Assembly (NCBI RefSeq): GCF_001194135.2
Contig: NC_068987.1
Location: 46,989,657-47,026,665 of the forward strand
DNA: 37,009 nt
Direction of reading: 5' to 3'
Source: Octopus bimaculoides
Taxonomy: Eukaryota
Shown here in pieces: positions 3,776 to 28,479 of the stretch. The position numbers were made by a program, and so were the translations under genes. Under the pieces are notes generated by a model. It was not told where the DNA came from and did not search any database. It saw only the letters and a list, made by a program, of their open reading frames with translations. The stretch's first letter is position 1. Every line of letters begins with the position of its first letter.

Positions 3776-4510
3776 GAAAAGATTTGAAATGCATAATGCA
3801 TTTTGTAATAACTATAATTACCCCCAACTAAGTAAAATCCTATTTCTTCAAATTAATATATATCATCAATATATATATATATATANNNNNNNNNNNNNNN
3901 NNNNNNNNNNNNNNNNNNNNNNNNNNNNNNNNNNNNNNNNNNNNNNNNNNNNNNNNNNNNNNNNNNNNNNNNNNNNNNNNNNNNNNNNNNNNNNNNNNNN
4001 NNNNNNNNNNNNNNNNNNNNNNNNNNNNNNNNNNNNNNNNNNNNNNNNNNNNNNNNNNNNNNNNNNNNNNNNNNNNNNNNNNNNNNNNNNNNNNNNNNNN
4101 NNNNNNNNNNNNNNNNNNNNNNNNNNNNNNNNNNNNNNNNNNNNNNNNNNNNNNNNNNNNNNNNNNNNNNNNNNNNNNNNNNNNNNNNNNNNNNNNNNNN
4201 NNNNNNNNNNNNNNNNNNNNNNNNNNNNNNNNNNNNNNNNNNNNNNNNNNNNNNNNNNNNNNNNNNNNNNNNNNNNNNNNNNNNNNNNNNNNNNNNNNNN
4301 NNNNNNNNNNNNNNNNNNNNNNNNNNNNNNNNNNNNNNNNNNNNNNNNNNNNNNNNNNNNNNNNNNNNNNNNNNNNNNNNNNNNNNNNNNNNNNNNNNNN
4401 NNNNNNNNNNNNNNNNNNNNNNNNNNNNNNNNNNNNNNTATATATTTATATATATATAGGTATATAGTTATATATCTCCCTTTCACTCCCTCTCTCACAT
4501 ACACACACAC

Positions 4511-5240: not shown

Positions 5241-5280
5241 TACTCATATTTTGAGTTCTATTTTTTCCTGTTTACATCAC

Positions 5281-5314
<34 letters not shown>

Positions 5315-7265: not shown

Positions 7266-7660
7266 TGTAGAATATAATCAACAGAACTGCAAGTACAATC
7301 TGTTTTTCTTATTTAAGTAGTTACTAGTTTTCAACCAAGTATTCCAACAGAAACACTCAGAAATTTAGGCTTCAACCCTCACATGAAAAAATAGACTAGT
7401 ATATAACAAAACAGCATAAAAAAAAAAGAAATATTTAGATAACAAACAGCATCAAAGTAAAACTAATTAATTATACAGAAGCAACACCAAAATGTTTTTA
7501 AAATGTACAAATGAAGAAACACTCAGGTACACACTTCACAAATATTAACCACATATATTTAGTAAAATAACAACATTAATAAACTTAATAGCGAACAAAA
7601 TGAAATTTAACTTTTTCTCTTCCCCCGTCACTTCCAAAGGTCATTGAATTTATGTTCATA

Positions 7661-7677
7661 TTTTTTTCTTTCTTCAG
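7661..7677 (+). other. Splice acceptor (polypyrimidine tract + CAG) opening the giant exon at 7678
   Basis: TTTTTTTCTTTCTTCAG at 7661-7677. Composition switches here from very AT-rich intron-like DNA to coding-like DNA. Confidence 0.75.
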
Positions 7678-7754
7678 TCAACGAACAATGACGTTCGGGT
7701 CGTCCCTTTAAAGCACAAGAAACAGGTGACGGCAGGAAATCTTAAAGGTAAAAT

Positions 7755-10700
7755 ATGGATAGGGCAGAAAGTAGGGCGGCTCCTAGTCGCATTGAGGTCG
7801 GTCGAACAGCTAGCATGGAGAATACCAGAGATGATATGATAAGATTACCGTTTATTGGCACCTTCCCACGAACTAGGAGGGATAAAATAGATGAGAGTAA
7901 AATACCATCTACCCAGTCTCCAACTAATTATAGACAGAAAATAAGGAGTGGCATATTTGGAAACAGAACATCGCGATTTCTCGAAGAAGTTAAATCTAGC
8001 GAACAAAAGGGGACTATATTTGGTTCGCTACCGCGGCGCAAAGTCACAGAAACTTGTACATATCCGGAACATCATAGCTCATTGCCCCGATCACATTCAG
8101 ACATGAAAACAATCAAGAGTTTGATTAAAGAAACTAGTTTTCCTGTGTATGGTGATGGTCGAAATACCTTTGAAAGAACAATTATAAACACAGATTACCG
8201 AAGATCTCCTTTCGCTATTCGATCGCCTCGTTCAAATAGTAACAGTCGTGCCAGTATGCATGACTATGCACTCAGTAGCGACGAAGGTTCTTGGTCGGCT
8301 GCGGATAGTGGTCATATTGATGATATGGAAAGTTCTGTGCTTAGTACGGCATCCTCGCAAAATGCTGGAGATTCCCATACAGACGAACAGAAAAAGAAGA
8401 AGAAAAACATCAAAAGTTTAGGTAAAAGAATCAAAAAGGGTCTTTATTCCCTTTTTCACAAACATGAAAAACGAGACAGAGACAGCGGTGTAGACGATAT
8501 CCGGCAAACTGATGAAGAAAGCAACAGGACATACTGTAGCACTGATTCCGAATTTGATCGCGACAGCATGAGCAATTTTTCTTACACGTCCAGCGTCAGT
8601 CGAAACAATTACGGAAGCAACGCAACTCTGTCACAAACTGGCCCCAGTGAAGATCGACTCAGTATGGTATCGTCATCAACGTTGTCAAATTATGGAAATG
8701 ATAGACATAAAGCCGGTATGCGTAGGGTGAGAAGTATGGGTTTCCAAGATAAGAAAAGTACTTTAGGCCACTTTGCTAATGCTACTCCTTATGATAAACC
8801 TGATGGAGATGTTACTTCGGTGTCTGCTCAAAATCAACGGAAGACATATTCGCATCAACTAGGCGTGTCTCCCGGAAGTTCAACTGACATCGTGGACAGA
8901 ACAGTGCAAGATCGCACAGTTTTGGCAAATACGAATATACATGAAGATAGTAATATGAGACGCAGCTTAACATCGGAGAAAATTAATAAAGACTCGAAGG
9001 TGACCAACAGAACATCATTACCATTTATGGGAATTAATTTGCATTCTAAGAAGAGCCAAGAATTCTCAGTGTCTTCGCAGAAAACACATATTGATCAAAC
9101 AGCTTCTGTGGAAGACCGTACTGTAAACACAGATAATAGCATGAGACGCAGCTTGACATCAGAGAAAATTAATAAAGACTCGAAAGCGACAAACAGAACA
9201 TCATTACCATTTATGGGAATTAATTTGCATTCTAAGAAGAGTCAAGAACTCTCAGCATCGTCGCAAAAAACACATCTTGATCAAACAGCTTCCACTTCGG
9301 AAGACGTTTCTGCTTCTAAATCAAAGAACACCAGTAAAGTCAGCCGTGGGTTGTTTGGTTTCTCCTTTCCCAACAGATCTAATAAAAGTTCGTCTTCTCA
9401 GCTCAAATCCACAACCAAAAATAATAAAGGCAACACAGAAGGGGAGGATACATCCTACAAAACTTCACAAGAACGGAAATCTTTGGAAGAGAAACACGGT
9501 AGAATGTTTCTTCCAATCTTGTCTGGACCAAAAGCCAGCAAGAACAGGTCGGTTGTTGTAGTAGCAAGCAGTATAGTTGGCATGTCACCATTAGGACAGT
9601 TGTCCGACTCCAGCTTTTCAAACATCGAAGATCTGAAAACCGACCATTTGAACGATAACATTCCGTCGTATACGGAACCGGACAAATTTAAGGATTCTCA
9701 ACAGCATAAAACGATTGCAAACTTCTTAGAAAGGAAAGACCCCAGAACACAAGATCTCTCCCCTGCAAGGAACAATAACCAAGTCTATCCTTCGGCAAAA
9801 CAGTCTGGTACTGAAAACTCTCGATTAAATAACATCCCAGGAGAAAATTCTGTAAAGTTGACAACGTCTAAGCGAGAATTTAACAAACATTCAAATTCAG
9901 AAAGTCATCAGTTGGGATACAATCTCTTACACAACCAAAGAACTGCTTCCCCAAAATCTGTTTCTATGCACCAACGCCCTGTTCCAGAAACAGCTGCCAC
10001 TGGTGTTGAAAGCCAGATCAGTAAAGAGAAGATAAATCTCGGTAACGAAAGCGTCATTCTGTCACAGGTTACCCAAGTCCGAAATGAAACCAAAAACGAG
10101 GAGAAAATATCTTGGCACACTAAAGAAACGAGTGGGAAAACAAATGAAGAGGATCATAGCATTAAAGAGGATAAAGCAAAAACTGTGTTTCAATATAGTA
10201 CTGAAAGCAATTACGATGATGATGATGACGACGATGATGACAATGAGTTCTTTGATATCGAAGAACCGACAGATAAGGCCACCACAAGTTCTGATGGAGA
10301 TAACACAGATTTGGAGTTCTATGACAGCGTAGAACTCGCTCCAGACACCCTTGGACAAATAAAAGAAGACAGTAGCGGAGAAAATAAAGCCGCCTTTGGT
10401 TATTCTTCAGCTACACAAATTAAAACCTCTTTTGAGCATTTAAGTCAGGACAAAATCCATCGCCAATCGGAAGACACCATTTCGAGTCGTTCTGAAATAA
10501 GTTTCAGCAAAAGCAATGTTTCACCACATCGATTACATAATGTACCAAACTCATCTGCTCCGGCGACTCAAGCTTTTAAGACTCCTTACATAACAGACAA
10601 TGGTGCCGAATGGATCAAGAGAACAGATTACAGCCAAGTTCTCACAAAAACCGATGATGTCGAAGAAATAAAAAGAAGATCCGATATTATTGTGCAAAAA

Positions 10701-13700
10701 TCGAAGAATATCGACGGAAGCAGTTTTGGCGAAAGGCCAACACTAGATTTATCAAATAGAGTAAATCAAATACAGAGAACAACAAACCAATCGAAAGCTG
10801 TTGAAGAATTAAGTAAATTCAATGAAATCAGTAGTTCAAGCAGAAAGACTGTTTTGTCAACCTCCCCTTCGTTATCAGCAACAAGAAAAACTGTTCCTTC
10901 TGGTAATATTACCAAGTCATTGGAATTATTCCAGAAAGAAATTACCAAAGCTGGAAAACAACCCATAAAAATAGAAGAAAAGACACAAATCTCAACTAGG
11001 GAGGAGAAAGGAGTTTGTGTGAGCAAACATGGGAGAGATAGTGCTGAAGAACCGCCTCCAGAAAGAGATAAACAGGATTTTGGTGTTAAGCCACTGAAAG
11101 ACAATAAAGATTCCCTTAGGATGTTTAGCGGTGCAGACGGTATTACCAACGCTAAATACAGAGGAATCAGACAAACCGAAGAATCCATCAAATATATTTC
11201 AAGATCTAACAGCGAGAACATTCCAAAGAAAGAAGTTGAAGAAGCGGCCATAATAAATGATGTTCCCACTCGGAGAAGTGATGACATCAAAACTGAGAAC
11301 CAATATGTTGGTGAGCAAAGCCCTGGGGATCAATCGATAGAAAATGTCAGGAAAGACGACATTGATGAAAATAAGAGCAAAAACATTATTAAATCAGATG
11401 AAAATCAATCCAGAAGGATCACTAACGATAATTCCAAAATCAAAGTTGATTCTGAAACCGCCTTATTGTCAACAGTCAGGAAATCAGATTTGGAATCGAC
11501 TGCAAATGACACTAAAAACATATATTCTTCAAAACATCCTAAAAGAGAAAAAAGCGAAAAGTCTTGGAAAAAATCTTCTAAAGAGAAGACTGATTCTTAC
11601 ACAGAACATACAGATGGTCGTTCACACAAGGAAATAGCCGAAAGCCAGCTTCCTCATCCTGAGAAAACAAAATCTACTGGAAGCGAAAATATTGCACAAA
11701 AATTCGATAGGCCTGAAGATAAAAATGAAGCAAATCTTGGTATTGGGGCTACTGAAAATAGGGAACCAATTCAGAAGGAAAAACCCACTAAGTCTGTGAG
11801 TGAAATGACTCAAATTTTCGATGCGAGTGGTAAACATTTGGGTTATGTCAGCATGGAAGAGATTCTACGACTTCTTAGTGAAAAGCTGAATCTTCCAAGT
11901 GCTGTCAACTTGGATCAAAATACCAGTAAAGATGCCGCTACGTCTGTGACCAGTAGCTTACATAGAAAGATGGAAGGGGCACCAGCAGAAAAAAGTTTTA
12001 AAGCAAAACATAGTTCGTCGTATGAGTCGAAAGATAAATTCGACAATGAACCCCATAGACATACCAGCAGTAAAGCTGACATGCTAAAGGAAAAAGAGTT
12101 TCATGATCACTCGAAGATTGATAGTGGAGTTGACAACAAATTCAGCAAAAAAGTTAGCCCTAAACATAGCAGTGAATCTAGCCCTGAGTCCAGCAGTGAG
12201 TCCAGTCCTGAACTCAGCAGTGAGTACAGCACTGAAGTGAGAAGTGAAACCAGTTCTGAATCCAGTACTCAGGCCAGTATAATAGATAAAAACGAACATC
12301 TCACTATCTTAAGTGAGCCAACAAGTAATGACACAAGTACTGAACACAGCGTTGAGTCTAGTCCCGAATTGAGCAGCGAGTGCAGTCCCGAACTGAGTAG
12401 TGAGTGCAGTCCAGAACTCAGCAGTGAATCCAGTTGCGCAGAACTCAGTGGAGATTCCAGTAGCCCTGACGTCAACAGCATCCCTAGTAGTGAGGCTAAC
12501 AGTGAAACAGAGAGCGACCAATTCCATAGTAAAGTCAGCAACCGAGAATTCAGCTTTGAACATAGCCGTGTATTGAATGAGGAAGATAAAATTAAAGATG
12601 GTGACACCAGTTCAGATTTCAAGCTCAACTTTGTTTCTGAGAATAAATCCAGTGATGATTCTAAGATTGACATCACAAGAATCATAGATAATAAAGATAG
12701 TGTAGATGTTCCAAATAAGGAAGACAGGACAAGCTGGTCCAAACGTCTTCACAGCGATTCAGATTTTGCTGCTAAGAATGAGAGTCTTGATAATCAAGTT
12801 GAAATCGATCAAGAAGCCAATATTGAAATTGGGAACAGAGATTTAAGCGAGAAACAATTCAAGGGTTCCGAAAAGGCCCTTGATACATCACTTGATAGTA
12901 ATACTGCTCACAAAACTGATAAGGAATCTAAACTCCAAACCAAAATTGATGCAGTTGATAATCGTAAAGTGAATTTAAGCCCAACTTCAACTGCGGAGAA
13001 TTTAAATAACATGAGTGATTTAAAGCATCATAGATCTGAAATACTTCAGGCAAGATCTACAGTTTCAGACGATGTTGGCGTTACGTCCAAGGAAGTTTTC
13101 ACTGAATTTGGTCAAAAACAGAAACCAGACGACGTAAATATTGAACAAATTGTTTCTGAATTCGTTGACAGTAAACATAAGTCAAGTGAGTATGATCTTA
13201 GAGCTTCCAATCATAAAAGCAGCGATGGAATTTTAACTAAAACGAATGATGCCAAAAATAGCAATAGCAGCGAAAATATTAAAGTCATTGAGATTTCCCG
13301 GAGCAAAAGTGAAAGTATTGAATGCAAAGAGGAGAAAGAAAACAAATACACGGAGCCAAACAAGCCAAAAGTAATCAGGAAATACAGTAAAAGTTCAAAA
13401 CATGTTGATATCGATCTTTTGGCAGACCAAATGAAGGAAGCAGATGTAAGCAGCAAGACAGATAAACTGGAAGATTCTTATCAGATAGTTTCGGAACAAA
13501 ATAAAGTGAAAGGTGACAAAGACGGGAAAACTGAAGAAAAATCCCGGCCGAAACAGAATCGCAAATCAGAACAGAAAAGAAATAAGAAGAAAAATAATAT
13601 AAATAAAACATCACGGAATAATGAAAACTTTAGTAGCGAGGATAACTCTGCTAAATCCAGCGGTGCCGATATTCCAGGTAAGACATCGTCTGAAAGACCT

Positions 13701-16700
13701 AAAAGAAGTGCGGTAGAATCTTCTGAAAGTGACGGTTCCAACAGTTTGGCCAAGTCTACGAGTAAAGTTAACCGTAAAGTAGATTTGGACAACGAAAGAG
13801 ACTACAAGAAAGACACAACATCAGATAATTCTTTAAAAGAGCAATCTCTTCTGTTAAGTCAGTCTAATGTGGTTGAAAAGAAACTTGCTAGCGATAGCAG
13901 AAGTTTTGAAGGAATTTGCGATAGAAAGATTAAGCCACTTCCGGTTAAGGATGATAATGTTAAAAAGATAACAGGCCAGATTTCTCCGTCTGTAAACAAT
14001 GAGCAAATTATGAATAAGAATAGCATAAAAGATGATTCTACTGTACTGAGTGATAAGGAAAACAAAATTATGGTGATTAAAGGGCGAGATAAGATTAAAT
14101 GTGACATCACATCATCATCGGACGATTCATCATCGTCTGGTAATGTTGATAAAACAAAGCTTTCTAGGTCTGTAGCTGTTAATGTGAAAAAAAGGGTTTC
14201 GTTTGACTTGAAACCTGACGTCAGCAAACATCCAGAAGATACAAAAGATAATGAACGTGTTTTGGATACGAAAAGCAACTACAAGGAGAAGAAATCTAAA
14301 CACAAGTCAAAGATGAAAACTAGCAAAAATATCGAAAGCAGTTCTGCAATAATCAGTGAAACTAGGAGTAAAATAAAGTCGGAAAACTCTTTATTAACAA
14401 AAGAGAAGAATGGAGAGGCCATTTGCACTGAGGAATCAAATAACGCTCCATCAGATATTATCCTTATCGAAAGTTCGAATAAAGAAACGGATGGGTTAAA
14501 ATTCTTCGAAAGACATCAGGCCGACAACGAGGTGATGGCATCCGTCAAAAAAGAGAAAGGAGCTACACCTTTTAAAACTGAAGAGTCTAAAAAGTCGAGG
14601 AGTAGAAATATGACGGCTGGTGTAGAAATATCAGAAATCCAGAAAGCGTCATATCTTTCCAGTAGAATCGGGTCGATTCATAACGAAAGCAAAGAAGACA
14701 AACAGTTCAATTTGCCACATTCTGGAAGTGAAATAAAGGGAGAAACGCGTGAGGGATTAGGTGAATCAAATTTTAAAGAAACACACGACCAAACAAACGA
14801 CACAGCGAACGAAAGAAAAGATTTCATTTCTGCTTGTCCAGAAATCAATGAGAAGGAACTAGAAATCGGAAATTTGAACGTCAAAGATCAGAATTATGCC
14901 AAAGATATCACCGAAGAAACGAAACTGGGAACCGATACCAATTTGAAAGAAAACTGGGGGATTTCGAGAATACAAAATGAAAATTTCGAAAATACATCTT
15001 GCCAGAAAATTAAGCAAAGTACTGTTGGTGTTAGTGAGAAAGAGCTTGATCAGGTAAGAGTGTATGAGACTGTGTCAAACGGGACTGTCGCTGAAGTAAG
15101 ACATGAAGGAAAAGATGCTGTTAAAATAGACTCTGTCAAAGACGAAGAGTCAATAAGTAAAGAGTTCAAAGAAAACAGCTTGTCAGAAAATAAAGAAGTC
15201 AATTTCATCTCTTCATCAAAATCGGCCGAATATACTGAAGTTAAAACCTCAAAGGAGGCAGTGACGAAAGATGTTGAATTAGATGGAAATGAACAGAATG
15301 ACAGGGGTTTCTCGAATAGAGAGGGAGAAAGTTGTGCAGAAGCAGATATTGACAAGCTGAAAGTTGAACAAAAAAAGGAGGATTCTGAATCTGAAGTTCG
15401 AATTGAGAAGAAGGAAGCTCGAATTATTGAAGATCTTTGTAAATACGCGGTGGAGGGTATAACAGAACCGTTGGAGGTTCTAAATACTCAGTATGTAGAA
15501 AACACGGAAATATCGATGGAAATTGTCTATGATAACGTAGCTGATGTCTCCATCGAATCTCATGAAATTGTACAAATAAATGTTGGAGAAAGTCTTACTG
15601 ATCCTGTAAACTTACATTGCAACGATCTAATGGAGGACTTGACGACATCTTTGAGTGATCTACTGGAAGATATTCGGACGACACCAACAGAGGTTCTAGA
15701 GAACGAGTTTAAGGAGATCTCGGTTTGTCCCGATGATATTTGTTGTAAACATTCAACTGAAATGTTTATTGATGTAAACAATGAACCAGAAGTCCTCCAA
15801 GATTCTGTATGCGTTCTGGAAGCAAACACGTTAGAAACACCAAAGGAATCAATAACCGACCAAAACGAGAGATTAGCAAAATTAACAGAAATTATAGATT
15901 ATGAGGTTATACATGTTGGCGGTGGCATGGAGCTTAGTGTATCAATAGAACAAGCAGATACAGTGCGTGAGGAGAAAAGAGATATTTCCGACGAGACCAA
16001 AGATGCTGAAGAAACATTAAAATCTGCACAAGAACTATATTCCACAGAATCTACAGAGCCTCTACAATATGAAGAAGTCAGTAAAATTGTTACGGCGGTG
16101 ACGAGAGCTCATTTCAAGGACTTGGAAAGAAATTTGATTGATTGTCTGAGCTACTCAGGTGACAATAAAGTAGAATATTGTACAGATTTGGTGGACTTGG
16201 AGGACATAGACCACGAAGAAAACATCATAGAGATCACTGCCGTGGAACATTCTAGAATAGAGGGTATTCCGATTGAGACGTTTGATGTTGCATCAATAGA
16301 CGAAATCATAAGCTTTGTGAAACTTGTGAATACGATATCTGAAGATCCGATCCATGATTTAACTGAACCTGTAGATATTGTCAAAGAAGTTCTTGCAAAC
16401 GCTTCACTAGAACCTGAACACGTGCTCTGTCAAAAGATTACTGAAACTCTATTGGAATCTATAAAAAGTCAACAGAAACTTGACTCTCAATCTTCTTCAG
16501 TTGCCAGTCGAAAAGATGACTCCAAGAGTTTCACTGGTGACAAAAGCCAAGTAATATCTGAGGAAAAATCTGACAAAAATTACTCGCCTGTAGAGTCACA
16601 ACAGTCACAACGGACATCAAACGAATTAGAAGAACACAGCGTAAAAGATTCTAAAGAACTTACTGGTAAAGTTAATGACAAAAGTATGTCTCTTTGCCTT

Positions 16701-19700: not shown

Positions 19701-22700
19701 CAAATATCAATTCAGCCGACGTCTATGGAAGATAAGAAAGAAGATATAAACAATGCAAATAAAGACATTGAGATCGAATCTTCAAAAGAGGAATCCGGTG
19801 AAATGAAACACATCGGGGATATTGTTAGTTCTAAAGGGAAAGATAGAATTATTCCTTGTGATGAAATAATACAGGTGTCGGAAGATGAAGATCATGCCAG
19901 CAGTGAAGACACAACCGATCGAGAAAGTAGCTCAGAATCTTCAAAATCTGTAGAAGAATCAAACAGTGAAATAAGTGAACCAGATTCTGCAGAAAGTTCA
20001 GGAATCATTGCTGCAGATTTAGAAGAAATGCCTCTGTTTTCTCCTCAAAAAATATCAGAGGAGATAAATATTGAAGATAGCGGTGAAAAAGCCTTCAATG
20101 AGGAAGACCAGAAAAACACATTTCATGAAGAAATTTCTACAAATCTTAACAATAAAATTGAAGAGTCAAAAGAATTTATAACCACTGAAGATGGGGAAAC
20201 AGAGCTTAAACTGTCGCCAGTTATTTCTAAGATTGATAACTTAGAAGATGGCTGCATCGAAAACATGGTCTCTGTTATTACAGTCGTTACAGATGAAGAT
20301 TTGTCCGGTGACTCGTTGCCGGAATCAGATATTCTCAAAAATGAAGACGATGCAAGACCTCAGTCAGTAGACTCTGATGTTGACGCAGAATTTATTGTGA
20401 CATCTTCTGGGTCCTCAGATATTGTAACACCAGAAGAGGATCTTGAACCTAAAATTAAAAGAAAGCCACCAGTTCCACTACCAAGAACAACTTCCAAGTC
20501 AGAAGCAAAGGATTCTAACAAGGAATCAGAATCATCTGAAGAAATCAAAGATTCAATAGAAACGGAATCAATGAATGATTATCCGGAAGATGGACAAACT
20601 TCAGTAGAAAGTAAAAGTAAAAAACCAGTTCCTTTACCAAGAAGTGGTGTTAAAACGGCTGAAAGTGTAAACGAATCATCTGAAACTGACGAATCTATAG
20701 AGGAACAGTTCAAAGATCTTTCGAGCAGATTTAACATGTTGCCGCCAGAAATGGGTGAGAAATTAAATTTTAAAAAGAAACCGCCAAAGTTACCGCCAAA
20801 ATCTAAACTTAGTGGTGAACCAAATAGCACCGAACAAATTAATTCTTATGATGATGAATCTGAAACTAATGATTCTGAAGAAATTAAAGATATCAAAAGT
20901 AGATTAAGTATGTTGCCAGCAGAAATGGGTTTCAAACTTAATTTTAAGAAGAAAACTCCACCGCCACCACCATCGAAACTTGCAACAAAAGACGATAAGA
21001 CAGGTGAAATACCTGAAGCTGTAAGTGATGATCATAATGAGAAAGAGAAGTTAATTGAAAATATAGAAATAAAGGAACAGGACAATAAAATCGAACCAAC
21101 AAGTTCTGGCACTGAAGAAGTTGATGATGCACAAATGGATCTAAAAAGAAGAATGAGTATGCTATCGGCAGAAATGGGAGTTGAAATTAATTTGAGGAAG
21201 AAAAGCCCTCCAAGTCCAGCACCAAAGGTGAAAAGGGGTGATAATTCAACTAACGCGGAAGAAAATAAATTAACTGAAGGCGACAAAGGCTCTGAAAGTA
21301 TTGACGGGTTGGAGCAAGTTTCTGATAACATCAATAATACGGACGATTCAGACGAACAATCAATGGATTTAAAAAGTCGGTTAAATAAATTATCTAACGA
21401 GATGGGAACTCAAGTAACTCTGAAGAAATCAGCCCCGGTACCGCCGCCTAAATTTACCAAAGACAAAACGAAATTACAATCGGAAGATGATGAAGAAGAA
21501 ATGGATTTGAAGTCACGAATGAATAAACTTTCTTCGGAGATGGGTACTGAAATTAATTTAAAGAAAACCCAAAAGCCCCCAGTGCCTTTACCAAAGACTG
21601 CAGCGGCAAAGATCAATAGTGTGACGGAGGTAGAGTCAAAAGATCCAGAGGAAAGTGGGGAGACCTCTTGTACATTCGTTATTTCTACAAGTATTGATGA
21701 CGTAGAATGTGATGAATCAGATAGTTTTACGTTTGTAATCAATAGTGATATTACCGAAGATCAAACCGTATCTGCAATCAGCGATAGCTCTGGAACAAAA
21801 TCTGAAACAACTACAGACGGTGACGTAAAAACAGCCGATAGCAGTGCAAATAAAGTAGAAGGTGATAATGAGGACTCTAACAGTTTTACTTTTACAATCA
21901 ATGAAGTGGCTGATAGTGATAAACCGAATTCTTATGACATCACTATATGTCCTACAGAAACAAATGAGGCCCCAGTGGTGGAAGAAAAGAAACCAGAACC
22001 GGAAGTTAAAAAAGAATTAACCGCCGAAGAGAAGGCTAAAGAGAGGCTAAAGAGAATATCGGAGATGCTGGAAGAGGAACGAAAGAAGCCGAAGGAGAGT
22101 ACTGTTGATGCCATGAAACGGAGGTTAAGTGGAAGTTTTTTGCAAGAGGAAGTAAAAGTCGATCCTGTAAAAAGGAGAAGCAGTCTTACCAGTAAACCGG
22201 CACCGAAAAAACTTGGCAATTTAGAAAATTTTCAGAAGAAATTTGGCGCTGCCAATGCACCTGGAATTGACTTTGATTCTATGAAACGAAGATATGGTCT
22301 GTTACCAGCTAAAGACAGTGTCAAAAAGGTGGCACCAGTTGAAAAGAAAGACAGTAAACTATCTAAAAGTAAAGATTCGTCCGAATCTGCCGCTAAAAAT
22401 GAAAATGTTACTGTTGAAACCGAAACGAAAAGTGTTGCCGAACCTTGTCCGATGACAACAGAAGACCAAGGAGACAAAACCAAAAATACTGAAGTTAAGG
22501 TTGCCCAAACAGAAGGAACTGTTGGAATCGATATAATCGAAGGAAAAGTAAGCGATAAAGGTAAGGAAGACGTAAACGAAAAGAGTAAAGTGGAAATAAT
22601 CAATACAGGTGAGGAAAAAGTTATCGATAATGAAAAAACAGCTGATATACCTGAGAGTGGGGACAAACAGACGACTATAGAAAAGAATGCCGATGACTTA

Positions 22701-25700
22701 AAATCTTCAAAAGAGATTATTGAATCGGAAGACAGTTCTAAAGAACTGAAGACTGTTTCGTCTGAGGTCGATCGTAAAGATAGTATTGATTCGAAAGAAT
22801 TATCAAACCAGAAACAAGGAATGCCAGACGCTCTGGAAAACACCGAATGTAAACCTGGCGTTAGTTTACAGAAATCTGATGAAGAAAGAATTAGCGATAA
22901 AATTTCTGAAGATAAAAGTCAGTCTAGTTCCGAAGAATTAAGCATTCAAAAACCTTTGTCTGTTACTGAAAGTACCGAAGATGTCTCTAAAGTAGATACC
23001 AAAGAGTCTCGGAAACTGGAGAATTCAGAAAAGCTTTCAAAGGCTCTTGAAAGTTCTTCAGATCTTAACAGGGATCAAAACTCTGTGAAGGATTCGAGTC
23101 TTGAAAAACAGGAAGGTTTGAGACAACCTACAGTTTTGGATCCAAAGGAACCTGGACAATATGATGATGTAGAAGATAGTGATACAGACAAAACATCTGA
23201 TAATGAGTCTTCGGTGGAAACTTCCAGAGAAAAACCAGCTGGAACTGTTAAAGATCATCTCGAGGTAGATGAGACTCAAAAAATATTGCATGAAGAAAAT
23301 AATAAACTTGAAGTAAACGAGGAAGAAGAAAATAAGGTAGGAGTAAAACAGGATGAAAAGAATAATCTGGGAGTAAAACAGGAAGAAAATAATAAGGTAG
23401 GAGTAAAACAGGAAGAAGATAATAATCTGGGGGTAAAAGGGAAAGAAGATATTAAATTGGGCGTAAATGAAATCAATATTTTCTCAGACGACACTAGTAA
23501 TGAAAAGTTAAAATCCAGCTACGATGTCCAAGAAGACTCTTGCGAATCTAATTCCCAAACAGAACAAACACTCTCCGATAAGGTAGATAAAAGTGAAGAT
23601 CAAACTAACATCACCAACAAAGATGTATCACAGCAACAAGTAACTGCTAAAGAAGGGGATGTATCGGAAAAAGAACAGCCATTAAGTGATGTAGATACTT
23701 CTACAAAACATATTGCTAACGAAGATAATCGGGATGCTGAGTTAGTGCAGGTAAAGGACAGTCAGGAGCCTGTTGCTAATGATGATATTCAGGATGCCAA
23801 GTTAGCCCAAATAAAGGAAAATGAAAATACTGAAAATAGGCGCCCAGAACCCAAGAATGAAATCAAATCAATCAAAGTTGAGGGTTTTAATATTGGTTTG
23901 CCAGAAAATATTGTCGGCACTGATAGTGAAGAAACGGATGAAGAATCTCCGAAAGTTCCACTCAATAAGGCATTCATTTTTGATCAGTTCAGGGATGCTG
24001 ACGAAGAGGAAGATTATGCTGATGAGGATGAAGCTGAAGATGATGATGACAGTGAAGAAATCGTAGAACGTTCGGGCGACAAATCGAGTAATTCACTTCC
24101 GTCTGAGGAATTAGTCGTTAAAGGTTTGAAGGAAAATAAAAATCTTGTTCGTCAGTCACAGTCAGAAGGTAAAAATAAGAAATTTATCAAAAGCTTTGAT
24201 GGTGACCGAAATATAGACGAGACACAGACCACCACCGAGATTCCATCGACAAAAGCTTTATCAAAGGAAAGAACTGTGGACCATAATGAACACGAGTCGA
24301 AGTTAGATAATGAAAAGGCTGTCAAAATGGAGTCGATTAAAGAACCTAAGTCCGTCACTTTAGATGACAAGTCATTTGAATGCACTAGCTCCACCGAAGA
24401 TACTCGAAGTAACAAAATACGACGTGCAAAGACAAAGTCGAAAATTTACACCCAACAAAATGCTGCAGAGAGCAAAACTGACATTGACAGCAAATATGAA
24501 AGAACTAGTAAAATTGTTGATAACAGTGAAAAGGTCACATCACAAGATAACATTTCTAAACTTGCCGCAAATACTGAACCACAATCGTCTTCCGAAAACA
24601 CAGATGTTTTGCAAGATATTATTCATAATATTAAGCAGACATTGCAAGAACGTAGCCTTAGCGACAACATTATATCTACGGTTATAGAATCATTGAAAAC
24701 CAAAGAGATTTTGGCTGATGTAACAAAAACAGAAGTAACAAGCAAAACAGATGTTCCATTCACCTCACACATTCCTGATGAGATTCTATCAGAAAACGCG
24801 GTCCAGAATAGCAAGCAATCATCCAGCCTGAACGAAAATGTTGATTTAAAGTCAGGCCCCAGCATCGACATTTTCGTATCCGAAAATGAAAAACTTGACG
24901 ATAAGTTTTCCAATAAGGCAAATCTTCCTGAAGCATCAGAACTAATTAAAGACATTACCAGTTCTATTGATATATCGAGTGAAGAAAACTANNNNNNNNN
25001 NNNNNNNNNNNNNNNNNNNNNNNNNNNNNNNNNNNNNNNNNNNNNNNNNNNNNNNNNNNNNNNNNNNNNNNNNNNNNNNNNNNNNNNNNNNNNNNNNNNN
25101 NNNNNNNNNNNNNNNNNNNNNNNNNNNNNNNNNNNNNNNNNNNNNNNNNNNNNNNNNNNNNNNNNNNNNNNNNNNNNNNNAACGATGAAAATGATGATAT
25201 GGATGTTTTTCTGGATGCAAATGAAAATATTGTTACTGATTCGAATATTGATATTAAAGATGAATCTGAACAGTCGGGAGAATTTTTCTTCACCATATCT
25301 ACGGAATTAGAAAATGCTGGAGACGAAGAAAATGACAATGAAGTAAATGTCGTGTTTTACATCGATGATAAACAGTCAGAATTATCAGTCGATGCAGACG
25401 ACAAATCCGAAGTGCAAGACGCCATTTTATTTGATGGTTCCGAAACCAACGTTGAATTTACTCTGGATTATAAATTTAATGAAGTAGACGATGTTTGTGA
25501 GGAGAAATACATATTAAATGACGATGCTATTGAGACAGAAATTCAAAGTGAAGAAGCAGAGAATAATTTGAAGTATTCTACAGATTATAATAAAATTAGT
25601 GACAGTAAGCGATGGTCTTCCGAAGATATGGGCGAAGAAACCACTACAGATAACACTGAAGAAGAATCAACTGTTTCTGTGACGGAACATTTGTCGTCTG

Positions 25701-28414
25701 ACATTAGTGGAGAGATAAATTTAGGAACACCAAATGAGTATAAAACATCAAACGACACTTTTGAAATGTCCCAGCAAGATAACTTGTTAGAAAAAACGAG
25801 TCCAGTTGCGTTCGAAAATGATGTTGGTAACTATAAGACCATAACGTCGTCTAAAGAAACTAATGACGATTTGAAAACGTCTGATTCAAAAGAGTTCTAT
25901 CAATATTCTAAAAAGGACAGCTTTGGGTCTGACACCATGGATTCGTCAGAAAACTATACTAGGACTGAAAGAAACGTCGAAGATACAAATAAAGTGTCAG
26001 ATACTTATTCAGATGGTTGTGATGAAGATGATGAGGTGGATAGTCTAATTGCAAACACTAGAAAACTTTTGCAAGGATTCCGTAAAATGAGGCTTCGTCA
26101 AGAAGAAGAACTTGAAATCTGGCGAAATCAGAAAGACAAGGATGTTTGTGATAGGGTCCCAACAGAGAGCTTAATCGGTAAACCGCCATACGAAGACATT
26201 CTACAGATAACAAATGAATGGGACAAGACAGATAAGAGTTGTGTAGATGACAGTGTAGATGAGACACACAGATATCAACAGAAACAAACAGAGTTTAATG
26301 ACACAGTAACTGTATCTCAGAAACACAAGGATTCTGAAACGTCTTCCGTCAGTTATAATGAGGATTTGTCACGTGACTCTCCAAGAGACTATAATAAAGC
26401 TGACACTATATCTTCACTTAAGACAGAAACAAAACCTGAAGCTGAACCTATGTCTAATATCTATGGAGAGACATTAGACACATCTTCGAGGTACCATCAA
26501 GAGACAGATGTGTTTTCTATGCCTCCTCCCGACAAAGAAGAGTTCGATAATAACTTCACAAATGCCAAAGATACCGCAAACAATTTAGAAAATGCGAAAA
26601 GGTCCAAAAAACATACGGAAATGGAGATTCGTAGGATTCTGATGACAGACTTATCACCGATACGAGAATTAGATGAAGAACAGAGCTTGCCAGAAACTAA
26701 CAATTTACAGGAGGAGTCTCAAGTACACAGTTTGGATATTCCTACGAACGATACTGTTCCTGCACCTTCCGATAGTCTCGTTAAAGAATGTGAAAAAGAA
26801 CCGTTATTGAACATCGAAATTGAGGTTGAAGGTGCAATTTATGATGAGACTAAACCAGTTGATGTTGCTACTGATAAACACTTGCCACCGCAAAAACCAT
26901 ACGTCAAGAGCAAAGAAGAATATAAAGACGATAATGTCGAGACTGTGATGGAAAAATGGGGTAGTATGCTTCTTCTTGATAAAGGTAGAAGTCGCAAAGC
27001 AAAGCAAAAGGACACCAAGACTCGGAAAAAGACATCAGACACTTCAGAACCATTGACTGAAAAAATATGCAATGTAACAAAAGATCAGGAACCAACGAAA
27101 GTCTGCGATACTGTCACAGCTAAGGAACCGAGTAAAGAAAAGAGTTTTGATGGTTCTAAACATTCGGAATCAACAAAAGTCCACGATACTGCTTTACTTC
27201 CGGAATCGCATAAAGAAAATAGCTTTGGTCGCTCCAAACTTCCGGAACCAACGAAAGTCCATAATACTGCTACACTTCCTGAACCAAGTAAAGAGAAGAA
27301 TTTTGGTACTTCCAAGCTTTCTGAAACAACCAAAGAACAAATCAGTGAAAAGTCCAAGATTTTAGAACCAAGGAAAGAAGATATTTGCGATTCCTCCAAA
27401 TTATTGAAACCTTTGAGAGAACAAATCGATGAAACCTTCAAACTTTCGGAAACAGCAAGAGAAAAGATCAGTGGAGACACGAAACTTTCGCAAACAGTTA
27501 ATGAAAATATTAAAGAAACCTCCAACGTTCCAGAAACACTCGTAGAAAAGAAGAGTGAAACTTATAAAGCACTGGAACCTTTGAAAGAAAACAACAGCGT
27601 AAGTCGAAAACTTCCGGAACCAAAAGAAGAAAAGTTCTTCCATACCACCAAACATCTGGATTCTTCGAAAGAAAACATCAGTGATATTTCTGTGAAAAAC
27701 AAGGAGGTTGAAGAGTATGGAAGGTTCCAACAGAGCACAGAGGGTCAGAGAAAAGTAGAACAAAAGAATCAATCTGAGTTTGATTCTCAACCCACAAAAA
27801 TAGCCGAACCTATCAGAAAGGCTGAAGATGATAAAAAGGATCAAACGCCCGAGAAAACTATTCGAAAGGATCCAAGACGAAAGGATTTAAGAACTTCAGT
27901 GAACGGTTCCTCTATGAATTCCGAAAAACCGAAAATCGAGCCAGTGTTAGACAAACCAAAGAAAACAAGAACTGCCGGAATGAGAAATGAGCAGCTGAAA
28001 CCTTGGCTATTTTCACATATGCAAAGTCCTGAGGATGAGGAAATGGAAAGTTTCATAAAGGTTTTGACTCAAAAGGACAACAGAGAGCGTAAGCAGAATA
28101 AAAAGGATGATGTTTCAATTTCCACTAAGGACAGGGATGTACCACTGGATAAGAAACAAGAGACAGAACCAGAAACCAAATACACCGAAACGCAGAAGAG
28201 TAACATTGTTGAGAGCATTGACAATACAAGTGTCACACACCCCAAAATATTGTCACAGACCCCAGAGGATATCGAAAGGAAATTGCTTCGAACTGACGGT
28301 AGTGAAAACGAGATGGTCTCAATAAGTGGTACTAAACCAAATAATGAAGTCCATGTTGAGAAACTTAATAGAAATTCTAACGTGGAAGATGTCAGAGAAA
28401 CATCGGCAAAGATT
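7755..28414 (+). CDS. Giant single-exon coding region, about 6,890 aa, acidic and low-complexity (E/K/S/D/T-rich), probably largely intrinsically disordered. It probably continues into downstream exons.
   Basis: 5,745 stop-free codons from ATG 7755 (A at -3, G at +4) up to the gap at 24992-25180. After the gap a second open frame of the same composition runs 25181-28414 (NDENDDMDVFLDANE...SAKI). That frame ends exactly at a consensus donor ATT|GTGAGT (phase 0); without splicing it stops at TGA 28433-28435. The region lacks the long non-coding microsatellites and TE insertions that crowd the flanks. Confidence 0.9.
8955..9292 (+). repeat. Coding tandem duplication, period 186 nt (62 aa)
   Basis: MRRSLTSEKINKDSK(V/A)TNRTSLPFMGINLHSKKSQE(F/L)S(V/A)SSQKTH(I/L)DQTAS at 8955-9106 and 9141-9292. 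Confidence 0.95.
12165..12470 (+). repeat. Coding Ser/Glu/Pro repeats, period 24 nt (8 aa, SSE(S/C)SPEL), two clusters
   Basis: SSESSPESSSESSPELSSEYSTE and VESSPELSSECSPELSSECSPELSSESS. Confidence 0.9.
17079..18200 (+). repeat. Purine-rich E/K low-complexity coding block; core KKEKKEREEK...KMKKE at 17079-17291
   Basis: Almost pure A/G codons with alternating Glu and Lys/Arg. Loose EVLVV/EISVV sub-repeats occur further on. Confidence 0.85.
20715..21596 (+). repeat. Five dispersed copies of a ~30-aa cassette D(L/I)xxRxxxLxxEMGxx(L/I/V)x(F/L)(K/R)K + Pro-rich tail
   Basis: Copies start at 20715, 20889, 21138, 21366 and 21504, all in frame. Confidence 0.9.
23301..23471 (+). repeat. Coding minisatellite, period 30 nt (10 aa, N(K/N)(V/L)GVKQEE(N/D)), 6 units with a 60-nt super-period
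   Basis: Units start at 23301, 23331, 23361, 23391, 23421 and 23451. Confidence 0.9.
24992..25180. other. Assembly gap (189 N) inside the giant exon. Other gaps: 3886-4438, 5618-5999, 28538-28963, 30298-30840, 33192-33740, 34760-34994, 36120-36171
   Basis: N runs read directly. Confidence 0.98.
27089..27680 (+). repeat. Coding repeat array: three 26-aa units (78 nt), then about eight 14-aa units (42 nt)
   Basis: E(P/S)TKVxxT...SKxx units at 27089, 27167 and 27245. Then ExxxExxxxxxKL(S/P/L)-type units every 42 nt from 27323 to 27659. Confidence 0.85.
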
Positions 28415-28420
28415 GTGAGT
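28415..28420 (+). other. Splice donor GTGAGT closing the giant exon (phase 0)
   Basis: Perfect GTGAGT directly after codon ATT (28412-28414). The ORF ends 6 codons later and (TG)n intronic sequence follows within about 70 nt. Confidence 0.8.
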
Positions 28421-28479
28421 ATTCGTTTATCGTGATTTTTATGAGACAGGTCCGCATTGTCATACAGATACGAATATAT

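What the first reader, a model, noticed from the sequence alone, without database searches (positions are those of the whole stretch)
7678..28414. A ~20.7-kb single coding exon encoding ~6,890 aa with no recognisable folded domain
Seen: 17.2 kb of stop-free frame, a 189-N gap, then 3.2 kb more of open frame, bounded by a strong acceptor (7677) and a perfect donor (28415). The flanking DNA carries a microsatellite or TE every few hundred bp, but this block has none of that kind, which points to purifying selection on the frame. Known: exons of this size are rare, with examples in titin, large mucins and the giant exons of neuronal ankyrins. Inference: this is a giant isoform of a scaffold protein (~0.75 MDa from this exon alone) made of disordered spacers studded with short binding motifs, able to span long distances in the cell. 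I cannot name the host gene from this window.
Basis: partly seen in the sequence, partly recalled or inferred. Interest (0 to 1): 0.85.

Follow-up and report, generated by a model that had tools for sequence, protein, structure and literature searches.

The report
Giant disordered cephalopod protein exon
This is a real, roughly 20.7-kb exon of Octopus bimaculoides that encodes at least 6,823 residues (about 767 kDa) of acidic, unfolded protein found only in octopus, cuttlefish and a third decapodiform cephalopod; it carries a few conserved short docking motifs, is only partly annotated, and has no known function.

Summary
The open frames are real. The + strand has no stop from 7752 to 24991 and none from 25181 to 28432, where about 422 and 78 stops would be expected by chance. 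Both parts share the same codon-position composition.

Two corrections apply. First, all three frames are closed between the acceptor (7676-7677) and 7751. Coding therefore starts at ATG 7755, after a 77-nt leader, and does not run in from an upstream exon. Second, the two parts are in different frames if the gap is the nominal 189 N. They join only if the true gap length is 1 (mod 3), so continuity is likely but not proven.

The window is O. bimaculoides chromosome CM046607.1. UniProt A0A0L8I0Z0 ("uncharacterized", 5,760 aa) covers part A and ends in an artefact, leaving the 1,078 codons of part B unannotated.

Orthologous giant ORFs exist in Acanthosepion pharaonis (16.4 kb open) and in a third decapodiform contig. 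dN/dS between those two is 0.24. An exhaustive profile search found no relative outside cephalopods, and Pfam and PDB gave nothing.

Only short motifs are conserved between octopus and decapodiforms:
- five helix + KKK + polyproline units (SH3-ligand type);
- GV..LKRMFGFSS;
- FFAT-like EF[FY]D motifs;
- RRxS sites.

Best reading: a lineage-restricted giant disordered scaffold or tether. The host gene's remaining exons and its function are still unknown.

The parts
7661..7677 (+). Polypyrimidine tract and acceptor AG (TTTTTTTCTTTCTTCAG). This is the 5' boundary of the giant exon.
   Evidence: It is the only site between 7600 and 8700 with a tract of at least 75% pyrimidine followed by YAG. The sequence is shown.
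7678..7754 (+). 77-nt non-coding leader of the exon. It holds a short upstream ORF starting at ATG 7688 (MTFGSSL*) and in-frame TAA stops at 7743-7745 and 7749-7751.
   Evidence: Stops occur in all three frames. The sequence is shown.
7755..24991 (+). CDS part A: ATG in a good context (AAAATATGG) followed by 5,745 codons with no stop, running open up to the assembly gap.
   Evidence: It is identical to the called protein P0002 (5,744 aa) and to the N-terminus of UniProt A0A0L8I0Z0.
8955..9292 (+). In-frame 186-nt tandem duplication (1.8 copies, 62-aa unit MRRSLTSEKINKDSK..).
   Evidence: TRF result. The copies differ at 7 synonymous and 4 non-synonymous codons.
10245..10265 (+). FFAT-like motif EFFDIEE, preceded by a run of nine Asp residues.
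   Evidence: The definition EFFDAxE plus an acidic flank is taken from PMC8306308.
10314..10334 (+). FFAT-like motif EFYDSVE.
15222..16484 (+). Least hydrophilic stretch (aa 2490-2910; 30-38% order-promoting residues, net charge about -0.2 per residue). No confident fold was predicted.
   Evidence: AlphaFold2 on the single sequence gave mean pLDDT 33. Pfam found nothing above threshold.
17025..17354 (+). Segment rich in Glu/Lys/Arg (at least 70% E/R/K over 110 aa). It is a candidate single alpha-helix spacer. The equivalent segments in the cuttlefish ORF total about 1,300 aa.
18264..18284 (+). FFAT-like motif EFYDSVD after a run of seven Glu residues. It is the same hexapeptide as at 10314 but is encoded with four different synonymous codons.
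19392..19460 (+). Conserved island GVLYAVDALKRMFGFSSS. The cuttlefish has GVFSALKRMFGFTS and the third decapodiform has GVFSTLKRMFGFSS.
19647..19667 (+). EYFD motif lying between the LKRMFGF island and the unit cluster. It is colinear with the decapodiform motif DLEYFSSD[DE]E.
20448..20642 (+). Two polyproline sites without the helix: KRKPPVPLPR and KKPVPLPR (PxPxPR type).
20709..21596 (+). Cluster of five repeat units: an acidic run, then [DE]LKSR[LFM]sxLpxEMGxxLx[FL]KKK, then PPxPPPK. The units lie at 20709-20801, 20883-20978, 21132-21227, 21360-21452 and 21498-21596. Every class I/II SH3-type motif of the protein lies at 20448-21596 (these units plus the two helix-less sites at 20448-20642).
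   Evidence: The cluster is conserved, with 6 units in the cuttlefish and several in L003. AlphaFold2 predicts a short helix at each unit with pLDDT 65-80.
21702..21902 (+). Acidic F-x-F-[TV]-I motifs (SFTFVINSD, NSFTFTINE). The decapodiforms have ETFVFTIV and [VT]FVFTL at the colinear position.
   Evidence: Predicted as strands at low confidence.
22017..22307 (+). Predicted helix (AEEKAKERLKRISEMLEEERKK), basic RRxS sites (MKRRLSG, VKRRSSL, MKRRYGLLP) and FQKKFG. These are conserved as MKRRLSLL and FKRKFG in the decapodiforms.
24992..25180 (.). Assembly gap (189 N, length estimated) lying inside coding sequence.
   Evidence: Both edges are open coding sequence. The frames differ by 1 nt at the nominal length, and the flanks do not overlap.
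25181..28414 (+). CDS part B: 1,078 codons with no stop and the same composition as part A. No gene is called over it in the locus gene table, and the older model reads only about 19 of its codons, in the wrong frame.
28415..28420 (+). Donor GTGAGT, phase 0. The same phase and a GT[CT]AGT donor end the giant ORF in both decapodiforms.
28433..28435 (+). In-frame TGA, 6 codons past the donor. This would be the stop if the donor is not used.

Best explanation
The block is the main exon of a gene restricted to coleoid cephalopods. It starts at the acceptor at 7677, carries a 77-nt leader, and begins translation at ATG 7755. It then encodes at least 6,823 residues (about 767 kDa, pI 4.8), most probably continuously across the assembly gap, and ends at the phase-0 donor at 28414|28415. 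That donor leads to at least one further exon outside the window.

The product is an intrinsically disordered, acidic Ser/Glu/Lys/Asp-rich chain. Most of its sequence evolves quickly, but a colinear set of short linear motifs is kept:
- FFAT-like EF[FY]D motifs in acidic tracts;
- a GV..LKRMFGFSS motif;
- a tandem cluster of five short helices, each followed by KKK and a polyproline SH3-ligand site;
- F-x-F-T-I motifs;
- basic RRxS sites;
- a Glu/Lys/Arg-rich segment that could form a stiff single helix.

Inferred mechanism: a very long flexible tether or scaffold. It would recruit several SH3-domain (or profilin-type) cytoskeletal or endocytic proteins at the polyproline cluster, and may dock on ER VAP proteins through its FFAT-like motifs. 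The disordered and ER/K stretches would act as spacers.

Shown here: the frame, the start constraint, conservation, selection, restriction to cephalopods, and the presence of the motifs. Inferred: continuity across the gap, use of the splice sites, all binding partners and the cellular role.
For: Frame:
- 0 stops against 422 and 78 expected, with matching codon periodicity in both parts.

Start:
- Stops close all three frames after the only strong acceptor.
- Both public models start at the same Met.

Identity of the locus:
- O. bimaculoides CM046607.1; UniProt A0A0L8I0Z0, 'Uncharacterized protein'.

Orthologs:
- The Acanthosepion pharaonis locus L001 has a 16,449-nt open frame (5156-21604) plus 2.5 kb more upstream.
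- L003, a third decapodiform, is open over 3-10001 and 10617-19973.

Selection:
- Across 2,965 aligned codons of the two decapodiforms, dN is 0.21, dS is 0.88 and the ratio is 0.24. In 150-codon windows the ratio ranges from 0.06 to 0.63.
- Nucleotide similarity between them stops exactly at a shared GAG|GT[CT]AGT donor.
- The octopus internal duplication differs at 7 synonymous and 4 non-synonymous codons.

Conserved motifs:
- Unit cluster: E = 1e-28 in the word-index search, E = 6e-117 and 2.5e-89 with the unit profile, and E = 6.5e-28 for the decapodiform profile against octopus.
- The LKRMFGF island, the F-x-F-T-I motifs and MKRRLS are colinear.
- All five class I and all three class II SH3-type matches in 6,823 aa fall in aa 4235-4566, and all seven proline-rich sites in aa 4235-4614.
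- AlphaFold2 places a helix of pLDDT 65-80 at each unit, within otherwise low-confidence chain.
- Three strict FFAT-like matches were found where 0.087 are expected (0 of 2,000 shuffles reached 3).
- Two identical EFYDSV hexapeptides are encoded with different codons and sit in unrelated flanks.
- The decapodiforms keep DDEFFDVI and DLEYFSSD[DE]E.

Disorder:
- Composition; no Pfam hit in octopus or decapodiforms; no PDB hit; pLDDT 33 for the most hydrophobic 421 aa.
Against: - No transcript, junction or peptide evidence could be consulted.
- With the nominal gap length, parts A and B are out of frame. The gap could hide an intron or a stop.
- The octopus N-terminal 450 aa and C-terminal 450 aa have no detectable relative anywhere. 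Conservation of the start and of part B is therefore untested. Apart from the motif islands, octopus and decapodiforms are unalignable.
- The cuttlefish locus has a 2.7-kb repeat stretch where the frame hops. L003 has two frame changes at A-runs. I read these as assembly errors, but that is an assumption.
- dS near 0.9 is close to saturation, and the Glu/Arg/Lys-rich parts align ambiguously.
- FFAT-like and SH3-ligand motifs are short and give many false positives. Position 5 of EFFDIEE is Ile, not a small residue. No partner was tested.
- The exon side of the donor is ATT, and a stop lies 6 codons further on, so use of the donor in octopus is not proven.
Confidence: 0.55

Rival explanations
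1. It is the long exon of a giant ankyrin. Giant ankyrins occur across bilaterians, and in molluscs the long exon lies downstream of the death-domain exons. On this reading the ORF is entered from an upstream ankyrin exon.
For: - Long ankyrin exons of 3.6-15 kb, often among the longest ORFs of a genome, are reported in Aplysia, Lottia, Ciona, Drosophila and C. elegans. Their sequence and repeats are not conserved between phyla (PMC5135030).
- The size, the disorder and the fast divergence match.
Against: - All three frames are closed between the only good acceptor and 7752, so an upstream coding exon cannot read in there.
- Public models start at the internal ATG.
- No ANK, ZU5, UPA or death-domain signal was found in the ORF or in the flanks of the window.
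- The unit profile hit no ankyrin among 1.84 billion representative proteins.
Confidence: 0.06
2. Parts A and B are not one exon. The gap hides an intron, or a stop followed by a new start, so there are two exons or two adjacent genes.
For: - The frames differ by one base at the nominal gap length.
- The older gene model bridged the gap with an intron.
- The locus gene table ends its model at the gap.
Against: - Coding-type sequence runs right up to both gap edges, with no donor- or acceptor-like sequence there.
- Composition and codon periodicity are the same on both sides.
- The gap length is only an estimate, and the bridging model lands in a wrong frame and stops after 19 codons.
- In the cuttlefish, the stretch from the unit cluster to the terminal donor is one uninterrupted ORF of about 3,000 codons.
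Confidence: 0.15
3. It is a giant microtubule-associated protein of the MAP1B/Futsch type, or an AHNAK-like giant. The Lys/Glu-rich repeats would bind microtubules or membranes.
For: - KKE/KEK-rich segment at 17025-17354, with very long Glu/Arg/Lys segments in the decapodiforms.
- AHNAK is likewise encoded almost entirely by one giant exon (my own knowledge).
Against: - No MAP1 N-terminal or light-chain homology and no Pfam hit of any kind.
- No 128-aa AHNAK-type repeats.
- No sequence relatives outside cephalopods.
Confidence: 0.06
4. It is a non-functional open frame that persists because of purine-rich, low-complexity composition. On this reading it is not a real protein.
For: - The strand is A-rich (A 0.40, T 0.22), which lowers stop frequency somewhat.
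- There is no expression evidence.
Against: - Even with this composition, 422 stops are expected in part A and none is seen. The other + frames have 307 and 792.
- dN/dS is 0.24 between two decapodiforms.
- Giant ORFs are retained in three species across the deep split between octopuses and decapodiforms (my own knowledge), with colinear motifs.
Confidence: 0.02

Closest known systems
Giant ankyrin long exons (vertebrate 480-kDa ankyrin-G and 440-kDa ankyrin-B, Drosophila Ank2-L/XL, C. elegans unc-44, the Ciona 13.3-kb exon)
   Same: A single exon of many kilobases that ranks among the longest ORFs of the genome. It encodes an extended, unstructured polypeptide whose sequence and repeats are conserved only between close relatives and which works through short embedded motifs (PMC5135030).
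   Different: Here the reading frame cannot be entered from an upstream exon at the only good acceptor, and no ankyrin domains are nearby. The exon is also longer (20.7 kb against a reported mean of 8.1 kb). No homology was found to any ankyrin.
AHNAK and other giant proteins encoded almost entirely by one exon (from my own knowledge)
   Same: Start codon in or just before a giant exon of 17-21 kb; a very large, mostly non-globular scaffold protein.
   Different: AHNAK is built from about 128-aa repeats and is restricted to vertebrates. This protein is mostly non-repetitive, acidic and restricted to cephalopods.
VAP clients that bear FFAT motifs (OSBP/ORPs, VPS13, PTPIP51 and others)
   Same: An EFFDAxE-like core with an upstream acidic tract in a disordered region (PMC8306308). 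The octopus protein has EFFDIEE after nine Asp residues, and two copies of EFYDSV[ED].
   Different: No lipid-transfer or membrane-anchor domain is present in this exon. Binding to the VAP MSP domain is untested. In the decapodiforms one motif has Ser at position 4, which resembles the phospho-FFAT variant.
Multivalent SH3-ligand scaffolds with proline-rich domains (for example the proline-rich regions of dynamin, synaptojanin, WASP/WIP, and Piccolo/Bassoon-type active-zone giants; from my own knowledge)
   Same: Tandem +xxPxxP / PxxPx+ sites clustered in a disordered region and suited to recruiting several SH3 domains at once.
   Different: Here each site is fused to a conserved 13-18-residue helix and a KKK motif. 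This 48-aa unit was found only in cephalopods, and no WH2 or RPEL match was found.
ER/K single alpha-helix spacers (myosin VI/X, caldesmon; from my own knowledge)
   Same: Long runs with at least 70% Glu/Arg/Lys and few Pro or Gly residues.
   Different: Only about 110 aa in octopus against about 1,300 aa in the cuttlefish. Helicity was not tested.

Membership tests
Giant ankyrin long exon | The exon is read in frame from an upstream ankyrin coding exon (after the UPA or death-domain exons). | tested here: not met
   Stops occur in all three frames between the only strong acceptor (7677) and 7752. The public models start at ATG 7755.
Giant ankyrin long exon | The host gene encodes ANK repeats, ZU5-ZU5-UPA and a death domain. 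| not testable with these tools
   No such domain was found in the ORF, and the window flanks show no coding signal. The flanks are only 7.7 and 8.6 kb long and contain many gaps.
FFAT-motif VAP client | A seven-residue core resembling EFFDAxE with an upstream acidic tract, located in an unstructured region. | tested here: met
   EFFDIEE after nine Asp residues, EFYDSVE, and EFYDSVD after seven Glu residues. Three matches were seen against 0.087 expected. The definition is from PMC8306308.
FFAT-motif VAP client | The motif is conserved across species. | tested here: inconclusive
   The decapodiforms keep DDEFFDVI and DLEYFSSD[DE]E. Only the EYF[DS] motif is colinear with an octopus motif (EYFD at 19647). 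The three best octopus motifs lie in regions that cannot be aligned.
FFAT-motif VAP client | Binds the MSP domain of VAP. | not testable with these tools
   Requires a binding assay.
SH3-domain ligand (class I +xxPxxP, class II PxxPx+) | A consensus polyproline core with a flanking basic residue. | tested here: met
   Five class I and three class II matches, plus five PxPxP[RK] matches, all within aa 4235-4614 and none elsewhere in 6,823 aa. They are conserved in the cuttlefish and in L003.
WH2 / RPEL actin-monomer-binding motifs | A match to the Pfam WH2 or RPEL profile. | tested here: not met
   A Pfam scan of the unit cluster at E up to 10 lists neither family. The unit profile finds no actin-binding chain in the PDB.
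MAP1B/Futsch | The conserved MAP1 N-terminal domain and the C-terminal light-chain domain. | tested here: not met
   No Pfam hit in the octopus or decapodiform ORFs. Domains in exons outside the window cannot be excluded.
ER/K single alpha-helix | A long run dominated by Glu/Arg/Lys with i to i+4 charge pairing that forms a stable isolated helix. | tested here: inconclusive
   The composition criterion is met for aa 3091-3200, and for about 1,300 aa in the cuttlefish. Helix stability was not assessed.
Cephalopod giant-ORF family (this locus, Acanthosepion pharaonis CAE1306168.1 region, ENA ERZ21867824 ctg113237l) | A giant single ORF carrying, in order, GV..LKRMFGF[ST]S, tandem [DE]LKSR..L..EMG..L.[FL]KKK-PPxPPPK units, F-x-F-T-[IL] motifs and MKRRLS, and ending at a phase-0 donor. 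| tested here: met

The most novel reading that the evidence does not exclude
Coleoid cephalopods evolved their own giant tether of about 0.8 MDa, unrelated to ankyrins, AHNAK or MAP1. It would dock on the ER through VAP-binding FFAT motifs and link the ER to SH3-domain cytoskeletal or endocytic machinery over long distances. If so, it would be a lineage-specific structural innovation of their large neurons or muscle cells.
Probability: 0.15. Interest if true: 0.75.

Novelty: new member of a known kind. Interest (0 to 1): 0.5.

Why it matters
Giant exons that encode megadalton disordered scaffolds are rare. The known examples (giant ankyrins, AHNAK, active-zone giants) organise large cells.

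This one defines a protein family seen only in coleoid cephalopods, animals noted for very large axons and complex nervous systems, and it has been missed or broken up by annotation:
- The octopus model is truncated by an assembly gap.
- The cuttlefish locus is cut into fragments, some of them antisense.

The conserved motif set gives concrete, cheap hypotheses for wet-lab tests: VAP binding and SH3 recruitment.

The locus is also a useful warning case. Assembly gaps and homopolymer errors in long, A-rich ORFs mislead gene predictors.

Tried and rejected
Searches that found nothing:
2. A chimeric query of the octopus N-terminal 450 aa, the octopus C-terminal 450 aa and the cuttlefish C-terminal 140 aa found nothing.
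3. A search with the 900 aa translated from the start of locus L003 (L003:3-2702) found nothing. The decapodiform loci could therefore not be extended, and no downstream-exon model was recovered.
4. Pfam on all parts of the octopus ORF and on both decapodiform ORFs gave nothing at or near the gathering thresholds. The weak DUF4677 match, at 15-18 bits against a cut-off of 27, was rejected.
5. A PDB profile search with the repeat unit returned only a chance capsid match at E = 0.5.
6. Rfam gave no match on the window.
7. tblastx and blastn of the window flanks against the cuttlefish locus found no conserved flanking exon. ORFs in the flanks are only microsatellite or N-run translations. The extra 2.2 kb upstream in L002 is almost all N.
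8. Literature searches for a cephalopod giant exon and for the motif strings found nothing relevant.

Results judged to be chance or uninformative:
9. The bacterial LRR and autotransporter hits to the unit profile (P0003, P0005-P0008) were rejected as chance matches to LxxLPxEIGQL-type repeats.
10. AlphaFold2 on the most hydrophobic 421 aa gave pLDDT 33. This is uninformative beyond showing no confident fold, so no fold search was run.

Other attempts and ideas:
11. The gap could not be closed from overlapping flanks, because they do not overlap.
12. EB1-type SxIP motifs number only 10 and show no basic/Ser context, so they were not pursued.
13. Reading the F-x-F-T-I motifs as LC3-interacting regions was considered, but the spacing is inconsistent and no claim is made.

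Full report
**1. Observation**

The window has eight N runs, and one of them (24992-25180, 189 N) lies inside the finding. On the + strand one frame is free of stops from 7752 to 25307, and another from 24983 to 28432. In the sequenced parts the coding frame has 0 stops. The two other + frames have 307 and 792 stops in part A and 45 and 144 in part B. Base composition predicts 422 and 78 stops, giving log10 P of about -190 and -35.

Codon-position composition is strongly periodic and almost identical in the two parts. Tandem Repeats Finder shows microsatellites of period 2-4 every few hundred bases in both flanks. Inside the block the repeats have periods that are multiples of three, apart from one purine-rich Lys/Glu stretch.

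**2. The gap (tested first, as asked)**

Coding-type sequence runs right up to both gap edges (...SSIDISSEEN | NDENDDMDVF...). Neither edge looks like a donor or an acceptor. With the nominal 189 N, the two parts are in different frames (codon starts at 0 versus 2 mod 3). They join only if the true gap length is 1 mod 3. The flanks do not overlap, so the gap cannot be closed from this window.

By contrast, the 52-N gap at 36120-36171 is flanked by 194 identical bases on each side, which is a false duplication. Gap flanks in this assembly are therefore not always reliable.

Continuity of parts A and B is supported indirectly. Composition and periodicity are the same on both sides. In the cuttlefish ortholog, the stretch from the conserved unit cluster to the terminal donor is one uninterrupted ORF of about 3,000 codons. 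I put continuity at about 0.8. It is not shown.

**3. Boundaries**

The acceptor TTTTTTTCTTTCTTCAG|T (AG at 7676-7677) is the only strong acceptor between 7600 and 8700. All three frames have stops between 7678 and 7751. In the ORF frame these are TAA at 7743-7745 and 7749-7751. An upstream coding exon therefore cannot read into the giant ORF through this acceptor.

The first ATG of the frame is at 7755, in a good context (AAAATATGG). Positions 7678-7754 form a 77-nt leader that contains a 7-codon upstream ORF.

At the 3' end...AAG ATT|GTGAGT lies at 28414|28415 in phase 0, and an in-frame TGA follows 6 codons later.

Both decapodiform orthologs end their giant ORF at GAG|GT[CT]AGT, also in phase 0. 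Their nucleotide similarity, 66-72% upstream, disappears exactly at that GT. This supports a real and probably homologous exon end, and at least one more coding exon. No such exon was found in the 8.6 kb of downstream sequence, which is full of gaps and microsatellites.

**4. Source and annotation**

The exact protein from ATG 7755 to the gap (P0002, 5,744 aa) is on record for Octopus bimaculoides GCA_001194135.2, chromosome CM046607.1, at about 46.99 Mb. It is the only gene called in 37 kb. Its cluster also holds UniProt A0A0L8I0Z0_OCTBM, 'Uncharacterized protein', 5,760 aa.

The UniProt model has the same start. It then jumps the gap from about 24978 to 25375-25431, lands in a wrong frame of part B, and stops after 19 codons. 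That ending is an artefact. The 1,078 codons of part B are thus effectively unannotated.

**5. Relatives**

A word-index search with the region 20052-22451 found one protein, an unnamed 1,203-aa fragment from Acanthosepion (Sepia) pharaonis, at E = 1e-28. Its genomic locus L001 has a 16,449-nt stop-free frame (5156-21604) and a further 2.5 kb of open frame at the locus edge. The depositors cut this into several small models, some of them antisense.

I then built a 48-column profile of the repeat unit and searched it with HMMER against 1.84 billion representative proteins. It found only three true hits: the cuttlefish fragment, the window's own protein, and a 167-aa fragment. All other hits were bacterial LRR or autotransporter repeats that match by chance.

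The 167-aa fragment lies on ENA contig ERZ21867824:ctg113237l (L003). That contig is cephalopod DNA, open over 3-10001 and 10617-19973, with two frame changes at runs of A inside KKK codons. L003 is 66-72% identical to the cuttlefish at the DNA level, so it represents a third, decapodiform species.

No relative was found outside cephalopods. The octopus N-terminal 450 aa and C-terminal 450 aa have no hit at all.

**6. Selection**

A codon alignment of the cuttlefish and L003 over 2,965 codons gives dN 0.21, dS 0.88 and dN/dS 0.24. In 150-codon windows the ratio ranges from 0.06 to 0.63, and this includes the non-repetitive disordered parts.

Within octopus, the two copies of the 186-nt tandem duplication differ at 7 synonymous and 4 non-synonymous codons.

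Three caveats apply. dS is near saturation. The Glu/Arg/Lys-rich regions align ambiguously. A 2.7-kb repeat stretch of the cuttlefish locus hops between frames, which I attribute to homopolymer errors in a 51-nt repeat array without being able to prove it.

**7. What the protein looks like**

The sequenced protein is 6,823 aa, 766.9 kDa, pI 4.83. Its composition is E 12.8, S 12.7, K 11.1, D 8.6, T 7.2 and N 6.4 %, with W 0.2 and C 0.7 %. It has no signal-peptide-like N-terminus.

No Pfam domain was found in the octopus ORF or in either decapodiform ORF, and there was no PDB match. The least hydrophilic stretch (aa 2490-2910) gave mean pLDDT 33 with AlphaFold2 on the single sequence. 'No recognisable folded domain' therefore holds, within the limits of these tests.

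**8. What is conserved between octopus and decapodiforms**

Only short colinear islands are conserved:

- (a) GV..LKRMFGF[ST]S (19392-19460).
- (b) An E-Y-F-[DS] motif (19647-19667).
- (c) A cluster of five units in octopus, six in the cuttlefish (20709-21596). Each unit has an acidic run, then [DE]LKSR[LFM]xxLxxEMGxxLx[FL]KKK, then PPxPPPK.
- (d) Acidic F-x-F-T-I motifs.
- (e) MKRRLS and FxKKFG motifs next to a predicted helix.

All class I/II SH3-type motifs and all PxPxP[RK] motifs of the 6,823 residues lie within aa 4235-4614. With the cuttlefish sequence as alignment, AlphaFold2 places a 13-18-residue helix of pLDDT 65-80 at each unit, within otherwise low-confidence chain. Pfam finds no WH2 or RPEL match.

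Separately, the octopus protein has three strict FFAT-like motifs:

| Motif | Coordinates | Context |
|---|---|---|
| EFFDIEE | 10245-10265 | after nine Asp |
| EFYDSVE | 10314-10334 | - |
| EFYDSVD | 18264-18284 | after seven Glu |

Composition-preserving shuffles predict 0.087 such motifs, and 0 of 2,000 shuffles reached 3. The two EFYDSV copies use different synonymous codons and have unrelated flanks, so they are not a recent duplication. The decapodiforms keep DDEFFDVI and DLEYFSSD[DE]E. The FFAT definition (EFFDAxE with an upstream acidic tract, and the phospho variant with Ser at position 4) is taken from PMC8306308.

A Glu/Lys/Arg-rich segment of 110 aa in octopus corresponds to about 1,300 aa in the cuttlefish.

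**9. Interpretation**

Shown: this is a real, selected, cephalopod-restricted giant coding exon, with an internal translation start and a conserved set of short motifs.

Inferred: a long flexible scaffold or tether. Its polyproline-helix cluster would recruit several SH3-domain (or profilin-type) proteins. Its FFAT-like motifs may dock it on ER VAP proteins. Its disordered and ER/K stretches would act as spacers. I give about 0.85 to the gene-level statement, about 0.4 to the scaffold mechanism and about 0.3 to VAP docking.

Rivals:

- Giant ankyrin exon, about 0.06. It is disfavoured by the closed frames after the acceptor and by the lack of any ankyrin signal. Jegla et al. (PMC5135030) show that such exons exist in molluscs and are otherwise similar in kind.
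- Two exons or two genes split at the gap, about 0.15.
- MAP1B- or AHNAK-type protein, about 0.06.
- Non-functional ORF, about 0.02.

**10. Novelty and verdict**

The existence of the ORF is already in public annotation as an uncharacterised, truncated protein. This work adds the following:

- the correct coding extent;
- the evidence that translation starts inside the exon;
- the orthologous giant ORFs in decapodiforms, and their mis-annotation;
- the evidence of purifying selection;
- the restriction of the family to cephalopods;
- the motif architecture.

The finding is a new sequence family within a known kind, namely giant-exon-encoded disordered scaffolds.

Noticed in passing
window 35926-36119 and 36172-36365: The 194 bases before the 52-N gap (36120-36171) are 100% identical to the 194 bases after it. 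This is a false duplication created at an assembly gap, and it produces duplicated spurious ORFs.
   Followed up: partly
window 24978-25431: The public model UniProt A0A0L8I0Z0 (5,760 aa) jumps the gap into a wrong frame of part B (25375-25431) and stops after 19 codons. The newer gene call simply ends at the gap. As a result, 1,078 codons (25181-28414) are effectively unannotated.
   Followed up: yes
L001 (Acanthosepion pharaonis CAHIKZ030003999.1) 1-23722: The deposited annotation splits a 16.4-kb ORF into small models, including antisense ones. In L001 2495-5155, the 51-nt repeat array (PPLKEETDLKEEAKDIS) hops between all three frames, probably because of homopolymer errors.
   Followed up: partly
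L003 (ENA ERZ21867824 ctg113237l) 1-20504: A contig filed in ENA under an analysis accession (ERZ), in the collection's metagenome-assembly set, is cephalopod host DNA carrying the orthologous giant ORF. It has two frame changes at A-runs in KKK codons, at about 10000-10620.
   Followed up: partly
window 7688-7711: A short upstream ORF (ATG 7688, MTFGSSL, stop) lies in the 77-nt leader before the main ATG at 7755.
   Followed up: no
window 7755-28414 (protein): Phe-Gly dipeptides are enriched: 12 are seen against 4.4 expected (P about 0.002). They often occur as basic-x-[ILMF]FG (GIFGNR, TIFGSLPRR, GLFGFSF, KRMFGFSS, KKFG). One of them is the invariant LKRMFGF island. Their meaning is unknown.
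   Followed up: partly
window 16832-17611, minus strand: A 780-nt antisense open frame lies opposite the purine-rich Lys/Glu segment. It is a by-product of composition, since the antisense strand there has few stop-forming triplets, and it is not a gene.
   Followed up: no
window 27080-27335: In-frame 78-nt repeats (2.7-2.9 copies) encode PEPTKVHNTATLPEPSKEK.F..SKL in part B. They are specific to octopus and have no decapodiform counterpart.
   Followed up: no
P0003, P0005, P0006, P0008 (bacterial proteins): The repeat-unit profile weakly matches bacterial leucine-rich-repeat proteins through LxxLPxEIGQL. This is a chance resemblance to the LSMLPAEMG core and not homology.
   Followed up: yes
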